Below are positions 1 to 26,549 of a stretch of 64,000 nt of DNA, in pieces. Positions within the stretch are counted from its first letter, which is position 1. Every line of letters starts with the position of its first letter. Below the pieces are notes generated by a model, which did not search any database, was not told the origin of the DNA, and worked only from the letters and a program-made list of their open reading frames with translations. The position numbers and the translations under genes were made by a program. The stretch spans positions 558,001 through 622,000 of the forward strand of contig NW_026781911.1 of assembly GCF_031769215.1 (NCBI RefSeq). The letters run 5' to 3'. The DNA comes from Ylistrum balloti (taxonomy: Eukaryota).

Positions 1-154
1 TTTAATATCAACACACAATTTCACAAAATAATTTCTCACCATAAATTTACAGTGAGTATTTATATAAAAAAATACATGTTGAACAAGTAAGTTTTTTATC
101 GAGCATTCAAGAATTTAAGGTCAATACACAATTGATTAATAAATACTGTGACTT

Positions 155-3100
155 TTAATCAGAAAAATAATATTGTGATATACCTCCATATGTCAGTGGG
201 ATGTTTGTTAGTGCAGCAGCCATTTGTTTCTCCATGGCAATGTCGACTATCCTCCAATCACCCATAAGTGTCATACCACTGATGGGATCCACTTTAGAAG
301 TGCGAGTCATGGCATCAATGTTTGGAGCAGAGTAGGTGTGTTTTGGCTCACTCCCCCGAATGGAGATGGGTCGGTAGAGAGGTGAGAGTGATATGGGACA
401 CTCATACTTCTGTGCCAATTCAGGGTCTGTAAACTTGGCATATCTGGGCATAGGCTTCCTCAGTATGTCAATACTGTAGGTCTTGTGTTTGAAAAAGACA
501 CAGAAATTTGTGATATTACATGATACAGAGGCATGTTAAACCATCATAGCAACTCCCATACATAACTTGGTGTGTATGAACTGAGTGTAGTTAAGATGAC
601 TGAGTATCCTGTGTATGAAATGATTAGAATGAGTAAACTTTAAAGTATGTTATAGTCTACCAAACATTGCCATGTGTACTTGCTTGGAAAAACTCAATAC
701 AAAATATAGCTTAAAAATTTTTTTTACAGCAATATTTGATCAATGGTGAATAAATACAAATATTACCTATCAATTGTTGTTCCATTTAAAGTAAACAATA
801 GCTGCCATTGTTACCTGTTTGTTAGAACCATCAGCAGACGTCACTTCTATCTGGATGTTGGTCTCTCCCACATTTAGTGGGTAGGCTGTTCCAGGCTTCT
901 CCCCACATACCAAAACGACATTTTTGGGGTCTGGTGCAACTGGTTTAGCAGTGACACTGGCCACATTGCATGGTAATACACCTATATGGAATAGATTATT
1001 GCTGAATAATAACATAAATTTTAAAGACAAAAAATTATTTCAAAACATCTTCAGGTTGGTAATGTCAGTAGAATAAAAGGTAACAGCATGATATTTTGAT
1101 GACTACAGAAATGTCACACTCCAATCTTCTAGACCTTTCATTGTATAAAAGTTCTTATAACATAACCGGTAAAAAATTTGAGCATGATATTTTGATGACT
1201 ACAGAAATGTCACACTCCAATCTTCTACTGGTTGTGTTACAGAAATCAACTAAACTTAGCCATTGAAATCAACTAAACTTATGTGACAGTCAACAGACAA
1301 AAAACTGTCAGTACAGAAATCAATATCATGTTAGAAGACAGACACATGGATTCAATACCTACTCTGAACTAAACCAGTCCAGTCAGCAAGGGTCAACAGA
1401 AATCAACTAAACTTAGCCATGTTAGTGACAGTCAACAGAAATCAACTAAACTTAGCCATGTTAGTGACAGTCAACAGAAATCAACTAAACTTAGCCATGT
1501 TAGTGACAGTCAACAGAAATCAACTAAACTTAGCCATGTTAGTGACAGTCAACAGAAATCAACTAAACTTAGCCATGTTAGTGACAGTCAACAGAAATCA
1601 ACTAAACTTAGCCATGTTAGTGACAGTCAACAGAAATCAACTAAACTTAGCCATGTTAGTGACAGTCAACAGAAATCAACTAAACTTAGCCATGTTAGTG
1701 ACAGTCAACAGAAATCAACTAAACTTAGCCATGTTAGTGACAGTCAACAGAAATCAACTAAACTTAGCCATGTTAGTGACAGTCAACAGAAATCTGCTAA
1801 TGCTGGCCATGTCAGCAAGGGTCAACTTAAATCTTCTCATCCTCACTGTGTCTGGAGGGTTAATAGAAATCTACTAATCCTAGCCATGTCAGTGAGGACC
1901 AACAGAAATCAATCAAAACTCACCATGTCAGTGAGCATCAACAGAACTCTGCTAAGCCTAGTTATGTCAGCGAGGGTCAACAAAAATCTACTCATCCAGG
2001 CTATATCAGCAAGGGTCAACAGAAATCTATAGATTCCATTGGTTTATGTCACTTTCAACATAGCTTTATTAGTTGAAAGTGACATAATGTACAACAGCTA
2101 TGGTGAGCAAAATTTTAAGTATCCAGGCATTGTCACAGTCAACAGAACACTACAGAATCAAGTCTAATGTAAGGGTCAGCAGAGCATTAAAGATCCTACA
2201 ACCATGTTAGGATCATCAGACGATTCAAACTTACAGCCATGTCAGGGTCAAATGAACACTGCAGATCTATGTCATGTCGTCTCAACAGATTACTACAAAT
2301 GCATGTCATGGTAACCACACCATTCCAGATCCTAGTGTTCATCATGGTCACCAGACCACGACAGATCACAGTCATGTCAGGCTCAACACTACAGATCCAT
2401 GTCATGTCAGTTTCAACAGACCAATAAAGATCCTAGCTCTATAGCACTACAGACTCTATAGCAATGTCATGGTCATCAAACCACTACAGACTCTATAGCA
2501 ATGTCAGGGTCCAGTGAATACTATGGACTCTATAGCAATGTCAGGGTCCAGAGAACCCTACAGAATCTATAGCAATGTCAGGGTCATCAAACCACTACAG
2601 ATCCTAAAGCAATGACAGGGTCCAGAGAACACTATAAACTCTATAGCAATGTCAGGGTCCAGAAAACACTACAGACTCTATAGCAATGTCAGGGTCCAGA
2701 GAACACAACAGACTCTATAGCAATGTCAGAGTTCAGAGAACACTACAGACTCTATAGCAATGTCAGAATCATCAAACCACTACAGATCTTATAGCAATGT
2801 CAGAGTCCAGTGAATACTATAGACTCTATAGCAATGTCAGGGTCAAGAGAACACTTAGGACTCTTTAGCAATGTCAAGGTCATCAGATTACTACATATCC
2901 TATAACAATGTCAGGGTCGTTAGACCAATAAAGATCCTAAAGTCAAATCAGGGTCAACAGAATTCTGCAGATCCATGTCATGACAGTTCATCAGACCACC
3001 AAATCAGGGTTTGCTGAACACTACAGACCTACAACCATGTTAGGGTCAACAGAGCACTGCAGATCCATGTCATGTCAGTCACAACACACCACTAAAGATC

Positions 3101-4475
3101 TTAGAGCCATGTCAGGGTCAACAAAACAATATAGATTATATAGCTATGCCTGGATCAACAAAAAACCTAGTCATGTCATGGTCATCAGACCACTACAGAT
3201 CATAGTCATGTCAGGGTCATTTGGTTGCTAAAGATCCTAGCTATGTCAGGGTCAACACATCACTACAGATCATTGTCTTATCGGGCCCCAACAAACCACC
3301 TCAGAATCTTGTGACTGTAGCCATAGCTGAATCAACAGCTAATGATAATCTCTAATCTTAACCATGTTATAATCATGTAACAGTAATCAATAATCTTTAC
3401 ACCAGAACAATGTCAAGGTCAACTGAAATCAACAGATCCTTGCCATGACAGAGTTAATGGAAATCAGGATATTTTTGTCACTCTCAACATAACTGTATTA
3501 CTGCTGAGGCTATATATATTGCCATATGTAACTTACAAGAGTAAGTGGTAACTGCAGAATCAAACTCAGGCATGAGACATCCTTGAGAAAACTTAAGGTC
3601 ACTAAGTACAGCATCTTTAGCCGAGAGGCGTTTCACATGGAGGAAATAGTTTTTCACAGTGCCATCTTCTGAAGTGACTTCTATTTTGATATCAGTTACA
3701 ACTCCTTCTGGTAGACCAACCTCCTTCTCTCCTCCACTTCCCTACAAATTAAGTAAACACCTGAACAAGTTAGTATTAAAGCACAATCTTTTCTCCTCAG
3801 TGCCCTACAAAGTAGGCATCTCCTTCTGATTAATGACCATTCTTCAAAGATGTACTTAATAAGACACCATCTGATCACAATATACATTTTCAAATTTTCA
3901 TGTTTTTCATGATAAATAAATCATTGAAGCTTGGGGAAATCTAAAGATCTGACAACTCTGCAGTACAGCAAAAGAAAATTCTACAATAATCTTATACATA
4001 TAAGAGATCACCATCCGCCTGTTGCTATTGGCAAATTTGTCGCAAGTTTCTTGCCTTGAACATTTATGTATATATTCTATCATTGTTTGAGTGATTTTAC
4101 AGCTACATATTTGGCAGCTGAAAGTGTACATATAAGTTGGAGCTGCTTATTTTTTAATTAACAGACCTTAAAAACTTTGTTTCATGTGAGAAGAGCTTAG
4201 TTTTGTACGACAGGAATCGAAAGTATTAATTCATACATGTTCAGTGTAGGTCAGGGTCATGTTTGCTTAATTGTTCTACCGTTTGCTGACCGACGTGAGA
4301 AAAATAATCGTACAGATATAGAATAAGATGCACCGGTGTCACTTGTGAGCGGATCAATTCGGATTTTTTCCACATTGCTTGCAACGGTCACAGCATATTC
4401 TGTAGTATCCTTGTTGAATACTGGGGTCAATTTTCCAGGTTTGACAGCTAACTTTTCTAGATTGCAGTCGTCCAT
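155..4475 (-). CDS. Protein with two cadherin-like beta-sandwich repeats and a C-terminal U-box/degenerate RING domain (4 coding exons; ~286 aa if the stop at 155-157 is used)
   Basis: Exons 4475-4314, 3741-3537, 981-815 and 481-155 are joined by GT-AG introns in consistent phase (0,1,0). Repeat 1: LEKLAVKPGKLTPVFNKDTTEYAVTV...IKIEVTSEDGTVKNYFLHVKR. Repeat 2: LSDLKFSQGCLMPEFDSAVTTYSC...IQIEVTSADGSNKQTYSIDILR. Then YECPISLSPLYRP...HTYSAPNI...DPISG. A donor-like GGAG|GTATAT at 184/183 means the gene may continue left of the window. Confidence 0.75.
1235..2100. repeat. 39-bp minisatellite, about 10 near-perfect copies at ~1392-1795 with diverged flanks
   Basis: Unit GTCAACAGAAATCAACTAAACTTAGCCATGTTAGTGACA; it produces the repetitive ORF 1419-1877 (MLVTVNRNQLNLA)n. 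Confidence 0.95.
2100..3470. repeat. Related diverged ~38-39-bp minisatellite (best conserved at 2440-2930)
   Basis: Unit ~ACTACAGACTCTATAGCAATGTCAGGGTCCAGAGAAC; it shares ATGTCAGGGTCAAC-like cores with the flanks of the left array. Confidence 0.85.
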
Positions 4476-4721
4476 CTTGAAACTTAGGAAGCTTCAGTGC
4501 GGACCTATAAATTAAGAATAATAATTTCAAAAACTTCGTCCCAAAATATCTTTTTTATTGTGAAAAGAAATGTAAAATGATATAAAATGTTCTCATTTAA
4601 ATACATGAATACATTGCTTTGTTTTTAAAAGATTAACAAAACAAGCGGCAACCGGATGTATACAAAATATTACGCGGGAAAGAATAAATTTTGACAAGGC
4701 TTGTGGTATCTGTGTGAAGAA
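4476..4721. promoter_or_regulatory. Bidirectional promoter with E2F-type element
   Basis: Only 246 bp separate two divergent ATGs. CGCGGGAAA at 4673-4681 is TTTCCCGCG on the minus strand, matching the E2F consensus. CCGGATG (ETS-like) lies just upstream. Confidence 0.6.
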
Positions 4722-5456
4722 ATGGCATCAGACGAAGACTTGAAGGACGAATTTTCAATTTTTGGCGTAGATCTTGAAAATCAAGATGTGATAGACAAAT
4801 GTAAGTGAAAACGTATTTATATGAACATTATCAATGTTAGTTTGTATAAGTTGCACTTTTGGTAAGTCCGCGGTACATTGCGGTATCAATATGGTTAAAA
4901 AAGCATCTAGCATCCAATTCTGCACATTGATGCTCAATGAAACCACACGGAACTGTTGTCGAATACTTTCGATTTCCCAAAGCATACGCGATTTATTGCA
5001 AAAATCGTGTATGACAATCACGACAATACGGTATAACCATGGCATCCCGTGGCATTCAAGCATTGTTAGCTTGCATTGATGTGTTGGAATGTTACTGATG
5101 TAAAGATATCATAATTTGTCAGTAGCTTATAATCTATAGTATGACTTTAATATACATAGGTTCCTAATACCCGGCAGTTTCTATTCAATGATAATTTTCG
5201 ATATTTTATTCAGTAAAAGAGTTGTGTGTCCTGTACCGACTAGATGCATCCCAAATCAGCACAGAATGGATAGCTTTCTTTAATACAAAGAAATCCAAAG
5301 GAAACATGACTCTTAGCTGTGAAGTGTTGGATCAGTTTGACAGAGAGGTTTGTGTTGAAGGATTGCCATATATGGACAACATTGCTTATCATATACAGTC
5401 AAACTTTGTTACTTCAAACTTGAAAACCTTGTTTAACTCAAAGTACTTTGTTGGTT

Positions 5457-8400: not shown

Positions 8401-11400
8401 AGGTTAATCTAAGTGGGCTTAAATGTTTTATATATCAGGCAGATAAGTACCTGTAGGTGTCCCTCATCCTGTTCGTTTTGAGTATAACACCTTAGTCCCC
8501 CATCAGAAACATGGGGACTATAGTTTTGGCATTGTGTATGTCCTTTCACTGTCATGTTCAGGCTCTTTCTCCTATATACTACTTGTAACTAGAACTTTCT
8601 ATTTAATATATGGGTTCACCTTAGAGCGGCAGTTTTCATGTATCAAAGGTAGGTCACTGACTTCCATTTTTATAATTGATCCTTATCAAAGAAAAAAACT
8701 GTCCAGGTGCTATCTCCTATGCTATAAGTCACTGGAACTTAATAGTTAGGATATGGGTTCATCTTAATAAGGTAGTGTGTTGTGTATCCAAAGTAAGTCA
8801 CTTTTACAAACATTTTGATCAATGGCCTACATCAGAGAAAAAAAAGTTAATCTAGGCTTTATTTCCTACACTACTAGTCACTGGTTTTTTGTTTCAGGTA
8901 TGGATTCACTTACAGTACATTCTTGGCATATAAGTTCACAATTAATGAGGGACTTTAAAGATAAAAATTAAAAGGACACTGCTCAATACTCAGAAATCTA
9001 TCTAAAATGTAGTTATGCAGGAAATCATACCTTTCAAACATAAATAACATTTTAGTCGCATCAAATTGTTTTGGAAAAAAAGGTGCAGGTCGCATTTGCC
9101 TTTAACTTGGACACAAGATCTGTTATTCATTATTGCCGGTATATGTATCTATGTCATTCACCATTCCAGTTCTCAATGATATGATTGAAGACCTTGCGGA
9201 ACAGCTCCAAGAGCAGCACAAGATAGAGGACTTGTCCCATGTAGCTTTACCTGTCCAGGAGCCTGTCACCGTTGTGGGACGGATTGGCTGTGACAGTATT
9301 GGCAAGCTGAACGCAAAGTCTGTGATATTGGAGGGCTCCCAGGAAACATCTGCTGGCAGGTGTATCCCTGTTGATCTGACTGAGCTCCAAGAGTTTTCAC
9401 TTTTCCCAGGACAGGTATGTTATCACTGCTGTCATCACTAGTGACCAAGTAGCCCTGTTGCTAATACAGCATCCAGACATTTTAACTGTGTAATTTGGAG
9501 GTCTTTTGTTATTCTCATTTCTTATTTTGGATATCACTGACATCAAGATAGCAAATTGTTTTTTATTATGAAAATGATATTTTTCAAGTATTACCTTAAA
9601 TCAATGTTCATTTCATATGAGATTTTATGAAACAAATTTTGGAAATTTTTATTTTCGTAAGTCTTGACTGGTTTCAAAGTCGAAATGTGGAAGACAAAAT
9701 CAAACAAAGGCAGTCAGTTTTCAATTTGGTATGACATTATGTCCTTATTAAGTCATCACAATTAATTTCAGAATGATGCAACTTATGACAAATGTTCCAG
9801 GTTATACTACACTTGTAACATTCGTTGATATGCAGAAATGTCACATGATTGAATTCACTGCATGACAGCATTTCCATAAAAACCCACTAAATGTGTGCAG
9901 TTTTCTTTTGAGAAAAAAACAGGTCCAAAGTTGGGTGGCGGGTGGGAGGGGCGGTATGCACATTTATTTTGGAACATTTACTTCAGGTTGGTTATGTCAA
10001 TAGAATAGGAGTTCTTATAAGACAAACAGTTTCAATTACTACACAGTCATCTTCATCAGATGACCAGTGTTGAGTTTACAAGCGCTGACATAGGTAGTGT
10101 ATGTGATAGTAAGGAATCAACCAATGTTAGTTGAACATTCTGTGATTGATTTCTTGGCTTCAGAGATTTTTTTAGACTGAATTTTTGGGTATGCACATTA
10201 TGCAAGTGGAAGCATTTTGTCGTTATTTTCAACCCCAAAAAGTACCTGCACTCATTATGAAGGGAAAGCATTTAGTCACTGCTTTGTCTGTCCATCCATC
10301 TTAATTCTGTCTGAGGCATAACCCAAAAACTATAAGAGGTATCAGCATAAACTTCATAGGTAGATAGATCAGAGCAAGAAGTACAGTGCCTAAGAACCAT
10401 TATTCACTTTTGCATAATTTAGGAGTTATTGCCCTTTATAATTTTGCATAGTTAAATTTTGTGCATTAAAAACTATAAGAGGTAATGACATGAAACTTCC
10501 TTCGGAGATAGGGGGTAGTGCACAAGAATCATAACTTTCTTATGCCCTTAATTATATTTCATTCTTGAATTTTGTCCCAATCGGGGAGCATAACCTGTCA
10601 CTGCTGGCCCTCGTACAGTATGTTTTTAATGTCACATTGATGTTTTTACTGTATTTTTTGCAAGTTTTGATATATAGGAATGATAATATGTCATTAAGTG
10701 AACACTGTCTACTTGCAGATCTACTACAATCAAAACAGCTTAAATTATATCTGTACTTCTATCAAAATGTCACTGGTCCATTTCAGATTGTTGCTTTGGA
10801 TGGAATAAACATTACTGGGCAAAAGTTTGTTGCAAAGAAGTTACATCAGGTAAATGTCTAGCACCTGTCATTGTTTTGGGACATTGAATATACAAATGCA
10901 TTATCTGTTGTTCCTCATTGATATTTCTGTAGATATATAAGTCTTCATGATTTTTTTTTAAGTATATTGTATGAAGGTTCCGATTGGTCATTTGATTAGC
11001 CAGTATCTTGTTTTACTTTTGTTCGTAGTTGTGATCAGGCATCTTAGAGTGCTTATATTAATTTCTATTCAAATCACTTTTTGTCCATAGTCCCTCTGTA
11101 AGCCATTCTTGTTATCAATATTTCTTGAGAAGAACTGAAGGATTTTTCTCAAACTTCATATGCTGGCACTTTAGTTGCACCATTTTAATTTTGAAACTGA
11201 TCAAGGAACCAATGGTTGAAGTCTGTTATTATTTCCATTTTGTATTTGACAGTTAAAAATACATTTAGGAAATTTTTTATTTAATAGGAGATTCATACGG
11301 GGAGGAGGTTAGTGGAGAAATTTAAGATATATTTTAGTATATTTGGAAAGTATATAACTCACATTGAAGGGACATAACAATAGCTTAAAGTAGGATGAAG

Positions 11401-24480: not shown

Positions 24481-26549
24481 ATGTCTGGATGTGACAACTT
24501 CGGACCAGGCAGTCCAGACTCCTGGCTGTCTGAGCGCGACAGTGTGGATTACAATGTCTTCTACAATAGCATGGACTCCATGGTGTTCCATAATGATGTG
24601 CATAGTTCACAGTTCCTGAAGGAAATGAAGGTGCTTTATGATGACGGCCTGTTGACAGATGTGACCCTGAGTGTGGATGGACACAAACTGCCTGCTCATC
24701 GTGTGGTACTGGCAGCTGCAAGCCCCTACTTCAAAGCCATGTTTACACTGGATCTGAATGAGAGTAGGCAAGATGTAGTGGAGCTGTTTGAGGTGGACTT
24801 TGAATCAGTGAGCCAGGTTGTGACTTACGCTTACACAGGGACTCTGGAAATTTGTCAAGAGAATGTTCAGAATTTGCTGGCAGCAGCTTCATTATTTCAG
24901 ATCATTCCAGTTCAAAAGGCCTGTGCAAGATTTTTGGAAACCCAGCTTGACAATAATAATTGTGTTGGCATATACTGCTTTGCCCAGGCTCATAGCTGTC
25001 TTTCACTGCAAGTTAAAGCAAGGGAACATATCGAAAAAAACTTTATGGATGTTTACCAGTGTGAGGAATTCTTACGACTTCCTGTGGATAAAGTTAAGGA
25101 AATTGTTGGCAGTGATGAACTAAACGTTGACAAAGAGGACATTGTCTTTGAAGCTGTATTAGCTTGGGTTGGAGCACAGGATGGGCGAACTGGTTTTCTT
25201 GGACAGTTGATGACACAGGTTCGATTTGGTCTCATTTCTTTACGATTCATGCAAGAAAGGGTGATGAAAAGCAATTCAATGCTTAGTGACCAGAGTTGTG
25301 TATCTCTTCTACAAGATCTGAAGGAGTTTGAAAGTAATCCTCATTCCTATCAGGGACAGAGCACCTTTAGCTTGTCTTTGCGTTCTGGTATGATTAAACC
25401 TGAGCACTGTATGTTACTACTGGGAGGAACAGAGAACCGTCGACCTTACATTAATTGTTACAACCCTTTAACAAGAGAGGCCTTTTTTATGAATGATTTC
25501 CCTGTTTCTCGAAGATATGGTGATTTTGATGTGGAAAGTCTGGCTGGTGTTGTTACTGACAAAAACACCTTGTTTGCTGGAGGTGGAAACTATATTTATC
25601 ATTCTGACAGTGGTGAGCACTTTGACTCCGATGATTCCTTAGATGAATTTGAAGAAAGGGTTGTAAGTAAAGATTTCTATCGCTATGACAACGATCACAA
25701 CAAGTGGATGGCCTTGTCTCCAATGTTATTTCCCAAATCAAACTTTTCTCTGGCTTCTTTAGGTGGAAAAATATATTGTTTTGGGGGTCTGACAGAGAAT
25801 CAGCATCCTACTGAAATCATTGAGGTGTATGACATTGACAAGAATCGATGGAGTTATCAAGGCATGCTCCCTACCTCACTGGTAGATCTGGCCTGTGTTG
25901 TTCATGAGGAGCACATATTCCTACTAGGGGGACGTACAGGTGTTGGTGCACATAACTTAGTTGTCATGTACCACCCTGTCAAAGGCCAGTGGATCACAAG
26001 GGCTGGAATGCTCACTCCCAGGTTTAATTTCGGTGCATGCATTGTTGATGATGAGATCTATATTGCTGGCGGTCAGATCTATTCCCAAAGTTCTCACACT
26101 ATTAACAGACAAGCTCTCAAGTCTGTTGAGATATTTAGTGTGGCAAACAATCAGTGGCNNNNNNNNNNNNNNNNNNNNNNNNNNNNNNNNNNNNNNNNNN
26201 NNNNNNNNNNNNNNNNNNNNNNNNNNNNNNNNNNNNNNNNNNNNNNNNNNNNNNNNNNNNNNNNNNNNNNNNNNNNNNNNNNNNNNNNNNNNNNNNNNNN
26301 NNNNNNNNNNNNNNNNNNNNNNTGGGGCTTGCTGTTGTAAATATGGCATTGTATGCATGTGGTATGACAGAAAGTGCACGGCTTACACACCCAACATATC
26401 GCAACATTGTGTGTCGGCTCGACTTTAGCCGTGGTCAGTGGGACATTATAGAACAAACCCTTTGTGATACCAGGAACTACAATTGTATTGCAGCCAAGCT
26501 CCATACTAGGAAGCTGTCACAGGTGTTCCGTCCTGAGGTAGATACATAG
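24481..26549 (+). CDS. BTB-BACK-Kelch protein (KLHL/KBTBD family), CDS interrupted by an assembly gap
   Basis: BTB: LTDVTLSVDGHKLPAHRVVLAAASPYFKAMF. BACK: NCVGIYCFAQAH...EEFLRLP...EDIVFEAVLAWV. Kelch repeats with GG..W (IYCFGG, IFLLGG, IYIAGG). After the gap the frame resumes as GLAVVNMALYACG...W and ends at TAG 26547-26549. Confidence 0.9.
26159..26322. other. Assembly gap (164 N)
   Basis: Run of N inside the Kelch CDS; the reading frames on the two sides are offset, so the gap length is not exact or the gap hides an intron. Confidence 0.99.

What the first reader, a model, noticed from the sequence alone, without database searches (positions are those of the whole stretch)
155..4475. Intron-containing gene fusing two cadherin-like beta-sandwich repeats to a U-box/Zn-less RING: candidate unusual E3 ligase
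Seen: two ~90-aa repeats with L..L....G.L.P.F....T.Y...V and I.IEVTS.DG....Y...V.R, and no N-terminal signal peptide. They are followed by C-P-I-S...H-T-Y-S-A-P-N...D-P-I-S, in which only RING ligands 1 (Cys) and 4 (His) are kept and the others are S/N/D. Established: this substitution pattern is U-box-like, and the cadherin-like beta-sandwich repeat (Pfam PF12733 type) is best known from bacterial surface proteins. Inference: a cytoplasmic ubiquitin ligase that uses bacterial-type sandwich repeats for substrate binding, possibly an old horizontal acquisition that later gained introns.
Basis: partly seen in the sequence, partly recalled or inferred. Interest (0 to 1): 0.7.

Follow-up and report, generated by a model that had tools for sequence, protein, structure and literature searches.

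The report
Zinc-less TRAF-type RING in scallop gene
The four exons are real, but they are only the start of a 1,099-residue scallop protein from an uncharacterised animal family, in which two bacterial-type sandwich domains precede a TRAF6-like RING finger that has lost its zinc-binding residues and a long TPR scaffold.

Summary
Observation mostly confirmed, gene model wrong. The four minus-strand exons (4475-4314, 3741-3537, 981-815, 481-184) have canonical splice sites. They match residues 1-277 of the RefSeq protein 'uncharacterized protein LOC132558767 [Ylistrum balloti]' (1,099 aa) exactly. The true donor is at 184|183. Exon 5 lies 29 bases beyond the window edge, and at least 13 more exons follow.

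Both ~90-aa repeats match Pfam PF12733. No Pfam U-box or RING model matches above its cut-off. A family profile nevertheless hits the TRAF6 RING plus zinc finger 1 at E = 6.5e-10. The AlphaFold model of exon 4 (pLDDT 88) matches TRAF6, RING1B, E4B and CHIP at Z 9.6-11. In the scallop only 2 of 8 zinc ligands remain.

Across 43 family members the zinc ligands have decayed, yet the TRAF6 residues that contact the E2 enzyme are kept: E, P, I and L of the E-C-P-I-x-L motif, and P244. Some relatives keep zinc site I, which points to stepwise loss.

The family spans Bilateria and every member is unnamed. Most likely it is a zinc-independent E3 or E2-docking scaffold, but this is inferred and untested. 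No RNA data were available. The horizontal-transfer idea for the sandwich domain was published in 2010.

The parts
4314..4475 (-). Exon 1. CDS starts at ATG 4475-4473. Encodes residues 1-54, the first half of cadherin-like repeat 1. Donor is TCT|GTACGA.
   Evidence: PF12733 E = 1.4e-6. Equals P0071 residues 1-54.
3537..3741 (-). Exon 2 (acceptor tttgtAG, donor T|GTAAGT, phase 1). Encodes residues 55-122 plus the first base of codon 123. Covers the end of repeat 1 (to about 3625) and the start of repeat 2 (from about 3615).
   Evidence: PF12733 E = 5.7e-5. Equals P0071 residues 55-122.
982..3536 (-). Intron 2, filled with related minisatellite arrays. These include a 39-bp unit x 10.3 perfect copies at 1392-1794 and a 37-bp unit x 12.8 at 2445-2918.
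   Evidence: The DNA run X1 covers part of it collinearly, with no joints.
815..981 (-). Exon 3 (acceptor atatAG, donor CAG|GTAACA). Encodes residues 123-178, the body of cadherin-like repeat 2.
   Evidence: PF12733 E = 3.5e-5. Equals P0071 residues 124-178.
184..481 (-). Exon 4 (acceptor cacaAG, donor GGAG|GTATAT, phase 1). Encodes residues 179-277 plus one base: the end of repeat 2, the whole zinc-less RING, the linker helix and the start of the degenerate zinc finger 1.
   Evidence: AlphaFold model pLDDT 88.4.
254..433 (-). RING-derived core, residues 195-254. Ligand-equivalent residues are C206, S209, S222(?), H226, S229, N232, D243 and S246. E2-contact equivalents are E205, P207, I208, L210 and P244. 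W254 is invariant.
1..183 (-). The part of intron 4 inside the window. The intron is 211 nt, and exon 5 starts 29 bases left of window position 1.
   Evidence: Downstream exons were found to C54:542090.
4476..4722 (.). Stretch of about 250 bp between this gene's ATG (4475, minus strand) and the ATG of the divergent DNA polymerase alpha subunit B gene (4723, plus strand). Probably a shared bidirectional promoter (inference).
   Evidence: PF22062 hit on 9133-9441.

Best explanation
Shown. Window 4475-184 (minus strand) holds the first four exons of Ylistrum balloti LOC132558767. This gene spans about 20 kb, has at least 17 exons and encodes a 1,099-aa protein with no signal peptide or membrane segment.

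Its architecture, in order:
- two PF12733 cadherin-like beta-sandwiches (residues 1-187);
- a module homologous to the TRAF6 RING + linker helix + zinc finger 1 (about 195-296);
- a TPR solenoid (about 323-827);
- an Ala/Pro/Arg-Gly-rich disordered stretch (827-940);
- a C-terminal TPR domain.

In the scallop 6 of the 8 RING zinc ligands and 3 of the 4 ZF1 ligands are replaced. The module is still predicted with high confidence to keep the RING/U-box fold.

Inferred (about 50%). The module works as a U-box does. It folds without zinc and docks a ubiquitin-conjugating enzyme through the conserved E-C-P-I-x-L loop and the D-P loop, possibly as a dimer as in TRAF6. The protein would then be an E3 ligase or E2-recruiting scaffold, with targets chosen by the TPR solenoid and/or the sandwich repeats. 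Identity and architecture: about 95% sure. E2-dependent ligase activity: about 50%.
For: Gene model. The exon translations equal P0071 residues 1-54, 55-122, 124-178 and 179-277. P0071's contig length, 701,920, equals that of contig C54. Downstream exons were located in the genome. The exon 4 / intron 4 / exon 5 junctions were read directly.

Domains. PF12733 scores 1.1e-27 in two stretches. TPR models match 39 of 43 members.

RING homology. The family profile A4 hits TRAF6 RING-ZF1 at E = 6.5e-10 over about 106 residues, RNF125 at 6e-5 and TRAF5 at 1.1e-3. The full-length profile A3 hits TRAF6 at 4.2e-4 as its only E3 match at E <= 0.001.

Fold. The exon 4 model has pLDDT 88.4. Foldseek's top hit is TRAF6 (TM 0.65-0.69, 22% identity). 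All top hits are RING or U-box E3 domains, but no Foldseek hit reaches E <= 0.001. VIA-align gives RING1B Z 10.9 at rmsd 1.4 A over 69 residues; the higher RING1B rows, up to Z 11.2, have rmsd about 14 A. It also gives TRAF6 Z 10.0-10.4 (rmsd about 2 A over 82 residues), E4B Z 9.9 and CHIP Z 9.6.

Conserved E2 surface. TRAF6 residues Glu69, Pro71, Ile72, Leu74 and Pro106 contact Ubc13 (PMC5346735). The I72D/L74R mutant abolishes E2 binding (PMC5702613). Their equivalents here are:
- E205: 43 of 43 members;
- P207: 43 of 43;
- I208: hydrophobic in 43 of 43;
- L210: 41 of 43;
- P244: 41 of 43.
By contrast, His226 is kept in only 25 of 43 and ligand positions 2 and 5 are S/T in 41-42 of 43. The equivalent of TRAF6 Arg-link (R125) is K or R in 33 of 43 members.

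The language-model feature search also placed exon 4 among U-box clusters at 0.92; this is a lead only.
Against: No biochemical or expression data exist for any member. No Pfam U-box or RING model passes its cut-off for the scallop protein. The equivalent of TRAF6 Arg-ZF1 (R146) is Gly or Ser in most members. The first Cys is Asp in 5 of 43 members. Conservation of the E-C-P-I-x-L loop could reflect folding or a partner other than an E2. The splice junctions rest on homology and on a RefSeq model, not on RNA reads: the only run found was DNA.
Confidence: 0.5

Rival explanations
1. Pseudo-RING. The decayed TRAF-type RING-ZF1 no longer engages an E2. It serves only as a structural, dimerisation or protein-binding module inside a large TPR scaffold, which would make the protein an adaptor rather than an enzyme cofactor.
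For: Zinc ligands are lost in both RING sites, and in Lophotrochozoa also in ZF1. The Arg-ZF1 equivalent is not basic in most members. No Pfam E3 model matches above its cut-off. TPR plus disordered Arg-Gly-rich architecture is typical of scaffolds.
Against: The positions that stay invariant are the TRAF6 E2-contact residues rather than the former metal ligands. Zinc-free U-boxes with the same fold are active E3s, which is established knowledge of CHIP and E4B, and both are structural hits.
Confidence: 0.35
2. One reading: a stand-alone 286-aa protein (two sandwich repeats plus a U-box-like tail), made by reading through or retaining intron 4 and terminating at TAA 157-155.
For: The frame stays open for 9 codons past the donor site. 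A minor retained-intron isoform cannot be excluded without RNA data.
Against: A canonical donor sits at 184|183. Exon 5 continues the frame and the homology. All full-length relatives from molluscs to fishes continue for about 800 more residues. The match to the Mizuhopecten orthologue P0001 stops near the donor, at about residue 101-103 of the 108-residue reading.
Confidence: 0.05
3. An SP-RING-like ligase for SUMO or another ubiquitin-like modifier, rather than a ubiquitin E3.
For: Weak zf-Nse (PF11789) hits: E = 0.022 for exon 4 and 0.0033 for a ray orthologue.
Against: Both hits are below the gathering score. The TRAF6 match is seven orders of magnitude better. SP-RINGs keep the second zinc site (my own knowledge). 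This family's less-decayed members keep the first site.
Confidence: 0.05
4. A secreted or surface carbohydrate-binding protein, like the bacterial proteins that carry PF12733.
For: PF12733 is mainly found in bacterial surface proteins, and a carbohydrate-binding role has been suggested for it (PMC2824669). Bacterial proteins match the repeats at 30-38% identity.
Against: There is no signal peptide or membrane segment. The domain is fused to RING-ZF1 and TPR modules, which are intracellular types.
Confidence: 0.03

Closest known systems
TRAF6 (and TRAF5) N-terminal RING + linker helix + zinc finger 1
   Same: It is the best sequence match (E = 6.5e-10 over about 106 residues) and a top structural match (Z 10.0-10.4, rmsd about 2 A over 82 residues, 22% identity). 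The pre-RING K-Y-E-C-P-I motif is shared. The last ligand position is Asp in deuterostome members, as in the TRAF C3HC3D RING. The spacing to the following C-x6-C-x11-H-x3-C finger is the same. The Ubc13-contact residues E, P, I, L and P are conserved.
   Different: Only 2 of 8 RING ligands and 1 of 4 ZF1 ligands remain in the scallop. There are no further zinc fingers, no coiled coil and no TRAF-C/MATH domain. Instead there are two N-terminal cadherin-like domains and a C-terminal TPR solenoid.
U-box E3 ligases (CHIP/STUB1, UBE4B/Ufd2, plant PUBs)
   Same: They have the RING cross-brace fold without zinc. Structural matches are Z 9.6-9.9. The D-P-x-x-x-x-P-L motif resembles CHIP's (my own knowledge of the CHIP sequence). 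CHIP also pairs a TPR domain with its U-box.
   Different: No member matches Pfam U-box PF04564. Sequence kinship is to TRAF-type RINGs, so zinc loss here would be independent of the classical U-box lineage. The domain order is reversed relative to CHIP.
RNF125-family RING + C2HC zinc finger
   Same: A RING is followed directly by a C2HC finger. The profile hit is E = 6e-5. PF18574 hits the finger in crinoid and urchin members, below cut-off.
   Different: The match is weaker than to TRAF6. There is no UIM and no C2H2 fingers, and the zinc ligands are lost.
CPED1 (C7orf58) and bacterial PF12733 cadherin-like domain proteins
   Same: They share the same beta-sandwich family. The paper that defined the domain names the urchin orthologue LOC580673 as one of the few metazoan carriers, and proposes lateral transfer from bacteria (PMC2824669).
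   Different: Those proteins are secreted or surface proteins. This family is intracellular by prediction, and its RING-like and TPR parts are not mentioned in that paper: 'RING', 'U-box' and 'TPR' each occur 0 times in its text.

Membership tests
Pfam PF12733 cadherin-like beta-sandwich domain | HMM match above the gathering score (24.2 bits) | tested here: met
   P0071 scores 96.7 bits in two stretches. Exons 1 and 3 alone score 29.1 and 24.6 bits; exon 2 scores 23.9. All 43 family members match.
Pfam PF12733 cadherin-like beta-sandwich domain | Seven-stranded beta-sandwich fold | tested here: met
   In the full-length model, residues 1-187 are all-beta with pLDDT 81-94. Foldseek aligns them to tandem cadherin EC domains.
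U-box (Pfam PF04564) | HMM match to the U-box model | tested here: not met
   There is no PF04564 hit for exon 4 at E <= 10, for P0071 at E <= 1, or for any of 43 members at E <= 0.01.
U-box (Pfam PF04564) | RING-like cross-brace fold without zinc ligands | tested here: met
   Model pLDDT is 88.4. E4B scores Z 9.9 and CHIP Z 9.6. Only 2 of 8 ligand positions are Cys or His.
U-box (Pfam PF04564) | E2 binding and E2-dependent ubiquitin transfer | not testable with these tools
   This needs biochemistry. The only evidence here is conservation of the E2-contact equivalents.
TRAF-type RING (C3HC3D) + TRAF zinc finger | Significant sequence similarity across RING, linker helix and ZF1 | tested here: met
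   TRAF6 is hit at E = 6.5e-10 and 42 bits, covering chain residues 9-114 of 5vnz_A, and at 4.2e-4 with the full-length profile.
TRAF-type RING (C3HC3D) + TRAF zinc finger | Eight zinc ligands in the RING | tested here: not met
   The scallop has C, S, S, H, S, N, D, S at the ligand positions. Class A relatives keep only site I, as C-C-C-C.
TRAF-type RING (C3HC3D) + TRAF zinc finger | Intact C2HC zinc finger 1 | tested here: not met
   The scallop has I272, T279, S291 and C295. Deuterostome members keep C...C...H...C.
TRAF family proper | C-terminal coiled coil and TRAF-C/MATH domain | tested here: not met
   No MATH hit occurs in any of 43 members. The C-terminal 800 residues are TPR plus a disordered stretch.
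SP-RING (zf-Nse / zf-MIZ) | HMM match above cut-off | tested here: not met
   PF11789 scores 15 bits against a cut-off of 27.

The most novel reading that the evidence does not exclude
This bilaterian-wide, unnamed family would be a second, independent origin of a zinc-free 'U-box-like' E3 domain. It would derive from a TRAF6-type RING-ZF1 by stepwise metal-site loss: site II lost in all members, site I then lost in most, and ZF1 lost in Lophotrochozoa. The E2-docking surface is kept throughout. The protein would be a still-active ligase whose targeting parts are a bacterial-type sandwich pair and a TPR solenoid.
Probability: 0.35. Interest if true: 0.65.

Novelty: new variant of a known kind. 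Interest (0 to 1): 0.5.

Why it matters
If the domain is active, the family would be a natural series for asking how a RING can give up its zinc ions yet keep its fold and its E2 binding. The series runs from members with both sites gone, through members with site I intact, to members with ZF1 intact or decayed. It would also add an unannotated E3 candidate that is conserved from molluscs to fishes. It corrects the database picture too: these proteins are labelled only 'cadherin-like beta-sandwich-like domain-containing' or 'uncharacterized', and the RING-ZF1 homology is not captured by Pfam. If the domain is inactive, it is an example of a RING retained purely as a structural module.

Tried and rejected
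- Pfam and NCBIfam scans on single exons gave only PF12733 and a sub-threshold zf-Nse hit.
- phmmer of exon 4 alone against PDB gave only TRAF6 at E about 1. The match became significant only with family profiles.
- Literature searches for 'cadherin-like beta sandwich' plus 'U-box', and for the UniProt-style family name, found nothing. A search on gene symbols found one paper, which mentions the urchin orthologue for its cadherin-like domain only.
- RNA evidence was not obtained. The run search returned one run, which proved to be genomic DNA: it is collinear over introns and shows no joints. The junctions are therefore unconfirmed by RNA.
A word search with the 'half-RING' relative P0048 found only itself. 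The taxa of the class A relatives therefore stay unknown.
- Foldseek with the whole 1,099-residue model gave only generic TPR solenoids (CTR9, SKI3, OGT/SPY, IFT-A) and cadherin tandems.
- The Atlas search on the C-terminal domain gave generic TPR clusters.
Full-length analyses used the database protein P0071, which equals the exon translations.
- I did not build a PF12733 phylogeny to test horizontal transfer. No non-metazoan eukaryotic carriers were in hand, so the tree could not have decided the question.
Full report
**1. What is in the sequence**

I read 1-5000 and translated the minus strand. This gives four exons with canonical signals:
- Exon 1, 4475-4314: ATG at 4475, donor TCT|GTACGA.
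- Exon 2, 3741-3537: acceptor tttgtAG, donor T|GTAAGT, phase 1.
- Exon 3, 981-815: acceptor atatAG, donor CAG|GTAACA.
- Exon 4, starting at 481: acceptor cacaAG.

The joined step was left out, and all full-length work used a database protein (section 2).

**2. The gene does not end at 155**

An exhaustive HMMER search with the exon 4 translation found 61 relatives. Several are 900-1,250 aa long, and in them the match sits at residues about 179-281. The best is a 1,095-aa Mizuhopecten yessoensis protein at 88% identity.

Searching the window's own assembly with that protein found 16 exon-sized matches on contig C54, from 562475 down to 542090. The window begins at C54:558001.

A word search returned P0071, RefSeq 'uncharacterized protein LOC132558767 [Ylistrum balloti]', 1,099 aa. 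It lies on a contig of 701,920 bases, which is exactly the length of C54. The four exon translations equal P0071 residues 1-54, 55-122, 124-178 and 179-277 letter for letter.

Reading the DNA shows that exon 4 ends GGAG|GTATAT at window 184|183. A 211-nt intron follows. Exon 5 (acceptor tttaAG) starts 29 bases beyond the window's left edge and continues the frame. The window edge hid exon 5.

No RNA run could be found. The single run that holds this DNA is genomic, collinear over introns and without joints. The junctions therefore rest on splice signals, exact agreement with the RefSeq model, and conservation of the downstream exons.

**3. The sandwich repeats**

The two halves of residues 1-190 align with score 83, against 26 +/- 4.8 for shuffles (z = 11.9). 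PF12733 matches each of exons 1-3 separately. It matches the full protein at 1.1e-27 in two stretches, and it matches all 43 family members examined.

The full-length AlphaFold model has mean pLDDT 82 and pTM 0.75. It shows two all-beta domains at residues 1-187, which Foldseek aligns to tandem cadherin domains. There is no signal peptide or hydrophobic segment (maximum Kyte-Doolittle value over 19 residues is 1.18).

**4. The RING-like part**

*Family models and profiles.* No Pfam U-box or RING model reaches its cut-off. A profile of exon 4 plus exon-sized relatives gave only marginal PDB hits. All of them were RING or U-box E3s: RNF125 at 1.1e-3, then TRIM31, TRIM21, TRIM5, PUB12, BRCA1 and TRAF6.

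Adding more divergent relatives and three N-terminal orthologues made the signal clear:
- TRAF6 RING + linker helix + zinc finger 1 at E = 6.5e-10 (42 bits, about 106 aligned residues).
- RNF125 at 6e-5.
- TRAF5 at 1.1e-3.

The full-length family profile also finds TRAF6 (4.2e-4). It is the only E3 among the hits at E <= 0.001; the rest are TPR proteins.

*Predicted fold.* The AlphaFold model of exon 4 has pLDDT 88.4. Foldseek's top hit is TRAF6 (TM 0.65-0.69, 22% identity), followed only by RING and U-box domains, although no Foldseek hit reaches E <= 0.001. VIA-align gives:
- RING1B Z 10.9 at rmsd 1.4 A over 69 residues (the rows with higher Z, up to 11.2, have rmsd about 14 A);
- TRAF6 Z 10.0-10.4 at rmsd about 2 A over 82 residues;
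- E4B Z 9.9;
- CHIP Z 9.6.

*Zinc ligands.* Using the TRAF6 alignment, the eight ligand positions in the scallop are C206, S209, S222(?), H226, S229, N232, D243 and S246. Across 43 full-length members:

| Ligand position | Residues observed |
|---|---|
| 1 | Cys in 38, Asp in 5 |
| 2 | Ser/Thr in 41 |
| 4 | His in only 25 |
| 5 | Ser/Thr in 42 |
| 7 | Asp in 39 |

So the family as a whole cannot bind two zinc ions.

*E2-contact residues.* The invariant or near-invariant positions are E205, P207, L210, Y214, P216, S222, P224, S229, P231, T237, K241, D243, P244, L250 and W254.

According to PMC5346735, which cites the TRAF6-Ubc13 structure, the contacts in TRAF6 are Glu69, Pro71, Ile72, Leu74, Met75, Ala101 and Pro106. 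I72D/L74R abolishes E2 binding (PMC5702613). Their equivalents here are E205, P207, I208, L210, S211, S240 and P244. Five of the seven are conserved and a sixth is a small residue.

The equivalent of TRAF6 Arg-link (R125) is K or R in 33 of 43 members. The equivalent of Arg-ZF1 (R146) is mostly Gly or Ser. PMC5702613 notes that TRAF5 also has Gly there and uses a neighbouring Arg.

**5. A graded series of metal-site loss**

Eight divergent relatives from unnamed ENA and Logan assemblies keep C-x2-C ... C-x2-C at positions 1, 2, 5 and 6 (site I). So does the Saccoglossus orthologue. At site II they have the same non-ligand residues as everyone else.

Deuterostome orthologues keep the C...C...H...C finger after the linker helix. 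Echinoderms and the hemichordate have an extra finger. All lophotrochozoan members, the scallop included, have lost three of those four ligands. AlphaFold still predicts the hairpin-helix unit with pLDDT 88-95.

**6. The rest of the protein and the family**

Residues about 323-827 and 945-1099 are TPR-type helical repeats. The evidence is the Pfam TPR models, PDB hits to OGT and designed TPRs, and Foldseek hits to CTR9, SKI3, SPY and IFT-A.

Residues 827-940 are disordered (pLDDT about 30) and rich in Ala, Pro, Gly, Lys and Arg, with nine RG dipeptides.

Named members come from:
- bivalves, gastropods and a chiton;
- a nemertean, an annelid, a bryozoan and a flatworm;
- echinoderms, a hemichordate, amphioxus and tunicates;
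- sharks and rays, sturgeon, bichir and teleosts.

None of the names returned was from a tetrapod, arthropod or nematode. This is an observation from capped lists, not a proof of absence. Every name is 'uncharacterized', 'hypothetical' or 'Cadherin-like beta-sandwich-like domain-containing protein'.

The only paper I found that touches the family is Anantharaman and Aravind 2010 (PMC2824669). It lists the urchin orthologue among the few metazoan carriers of the newly defined cadherin-like domain and proposes lateral transfer of that domain from bacteria. It does not mention a RING, U-box or TPR. I could not test it further.

**7. Interpretation**

Shown:
- the gene structure;
- the PF12733 repeats;
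- homology of residues about 195-296 to TRAF6 RING-ZF1;
- loss of the metal ligands;
- a confident RING/U-box-like predicted fold;
- conservation of the E2-contact equivalents;
- the TPR scaffold;
- the broad bilaterian distribution.

Inferred: the module folds without zinc, as U-boxes do, and still docks an E2. That would make the protein an E3 or an E2-recruiting scaffold, which I put at about 50%.

The main rival is a non-catalytic pseudo-RING, at about 35%. Minor rivals are a real 286-aa isoform, a SUMO-type ligase and an extracellular role.

It works like a U-box but is not a member of the Pfam U-box family. By descent it is a TRAF-type RING-ZF1, but it fails the TRAF family's defining features: the metal ligands and the MATH domain.

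**8. Verdict**

The gene model is truncated by the window edge. The 'U-box' label should be replaced by 'zinc-less TRAF6-type RING-ZF1'. This is a new variant of a known kind, in a conserved but unstudied family. Interest is moderate (0.5).

Noticed in passing
window 982-3536 (intron 2), especially 1392-1794 and 2445-2918: The intron is almost wholly made of related minisatellites sharing a ...CCATGTCAG...TCAACAGA... core. They include a perfect 39-bp x 10.3 array and a 37-bp x 12.8 array. The array's open frame gives a spurious 152-aa repetitive ORF on the plus strand.
   Followed up: partly
window about 1187-1385 (L018 2588-2786): In the DNA run X1, summed contig depth jumps to about 14,900 against about 10 on the flanks. 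Many loose ends and short pieces occur there. This indicates a very high-copy dispersed or satellite repeat just upstream of the 39-bp array. The stretch includes a duplicated ~50-bp unit at about 1087-1135 and 1180-1228.
   Followed up: no
window 4723 to about 18700, plus strand: This is a divergently transcribed DNA polymerase alpha subunit B (POLA2-type) gene. Its N-terminus begins MASDEDLKDEF, and the OB domain PF22062 matches at 3.1e-29 on 9133-9441. Its ATG lies only about 250 bp from the ATG of the gene studied, so the two probably share a bidirectional promoter.
   Followed up: partly
window 24481-26549, plus strand: This is a single long ORF for a BTB-BACK-Kelch (KLHL-type) protein: BTB 1e-29, BACK 3.7e-27, Kelch 1.9e-25.
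   Followed up: partly
relatives P0139 (sturgeon) and P0103 (urchin): The sturgeon record fuses the family's N-terminus and TPRs to a HECT fragment. It is labelled 'G2/M phase-specific E3 ubiquitin-protein ligase, partial' and is probably a gene-model fusion with a neighbouring gene. The urchin RefSeq model has an aberrant C-terminus compared with the other members.
   Followed up: no
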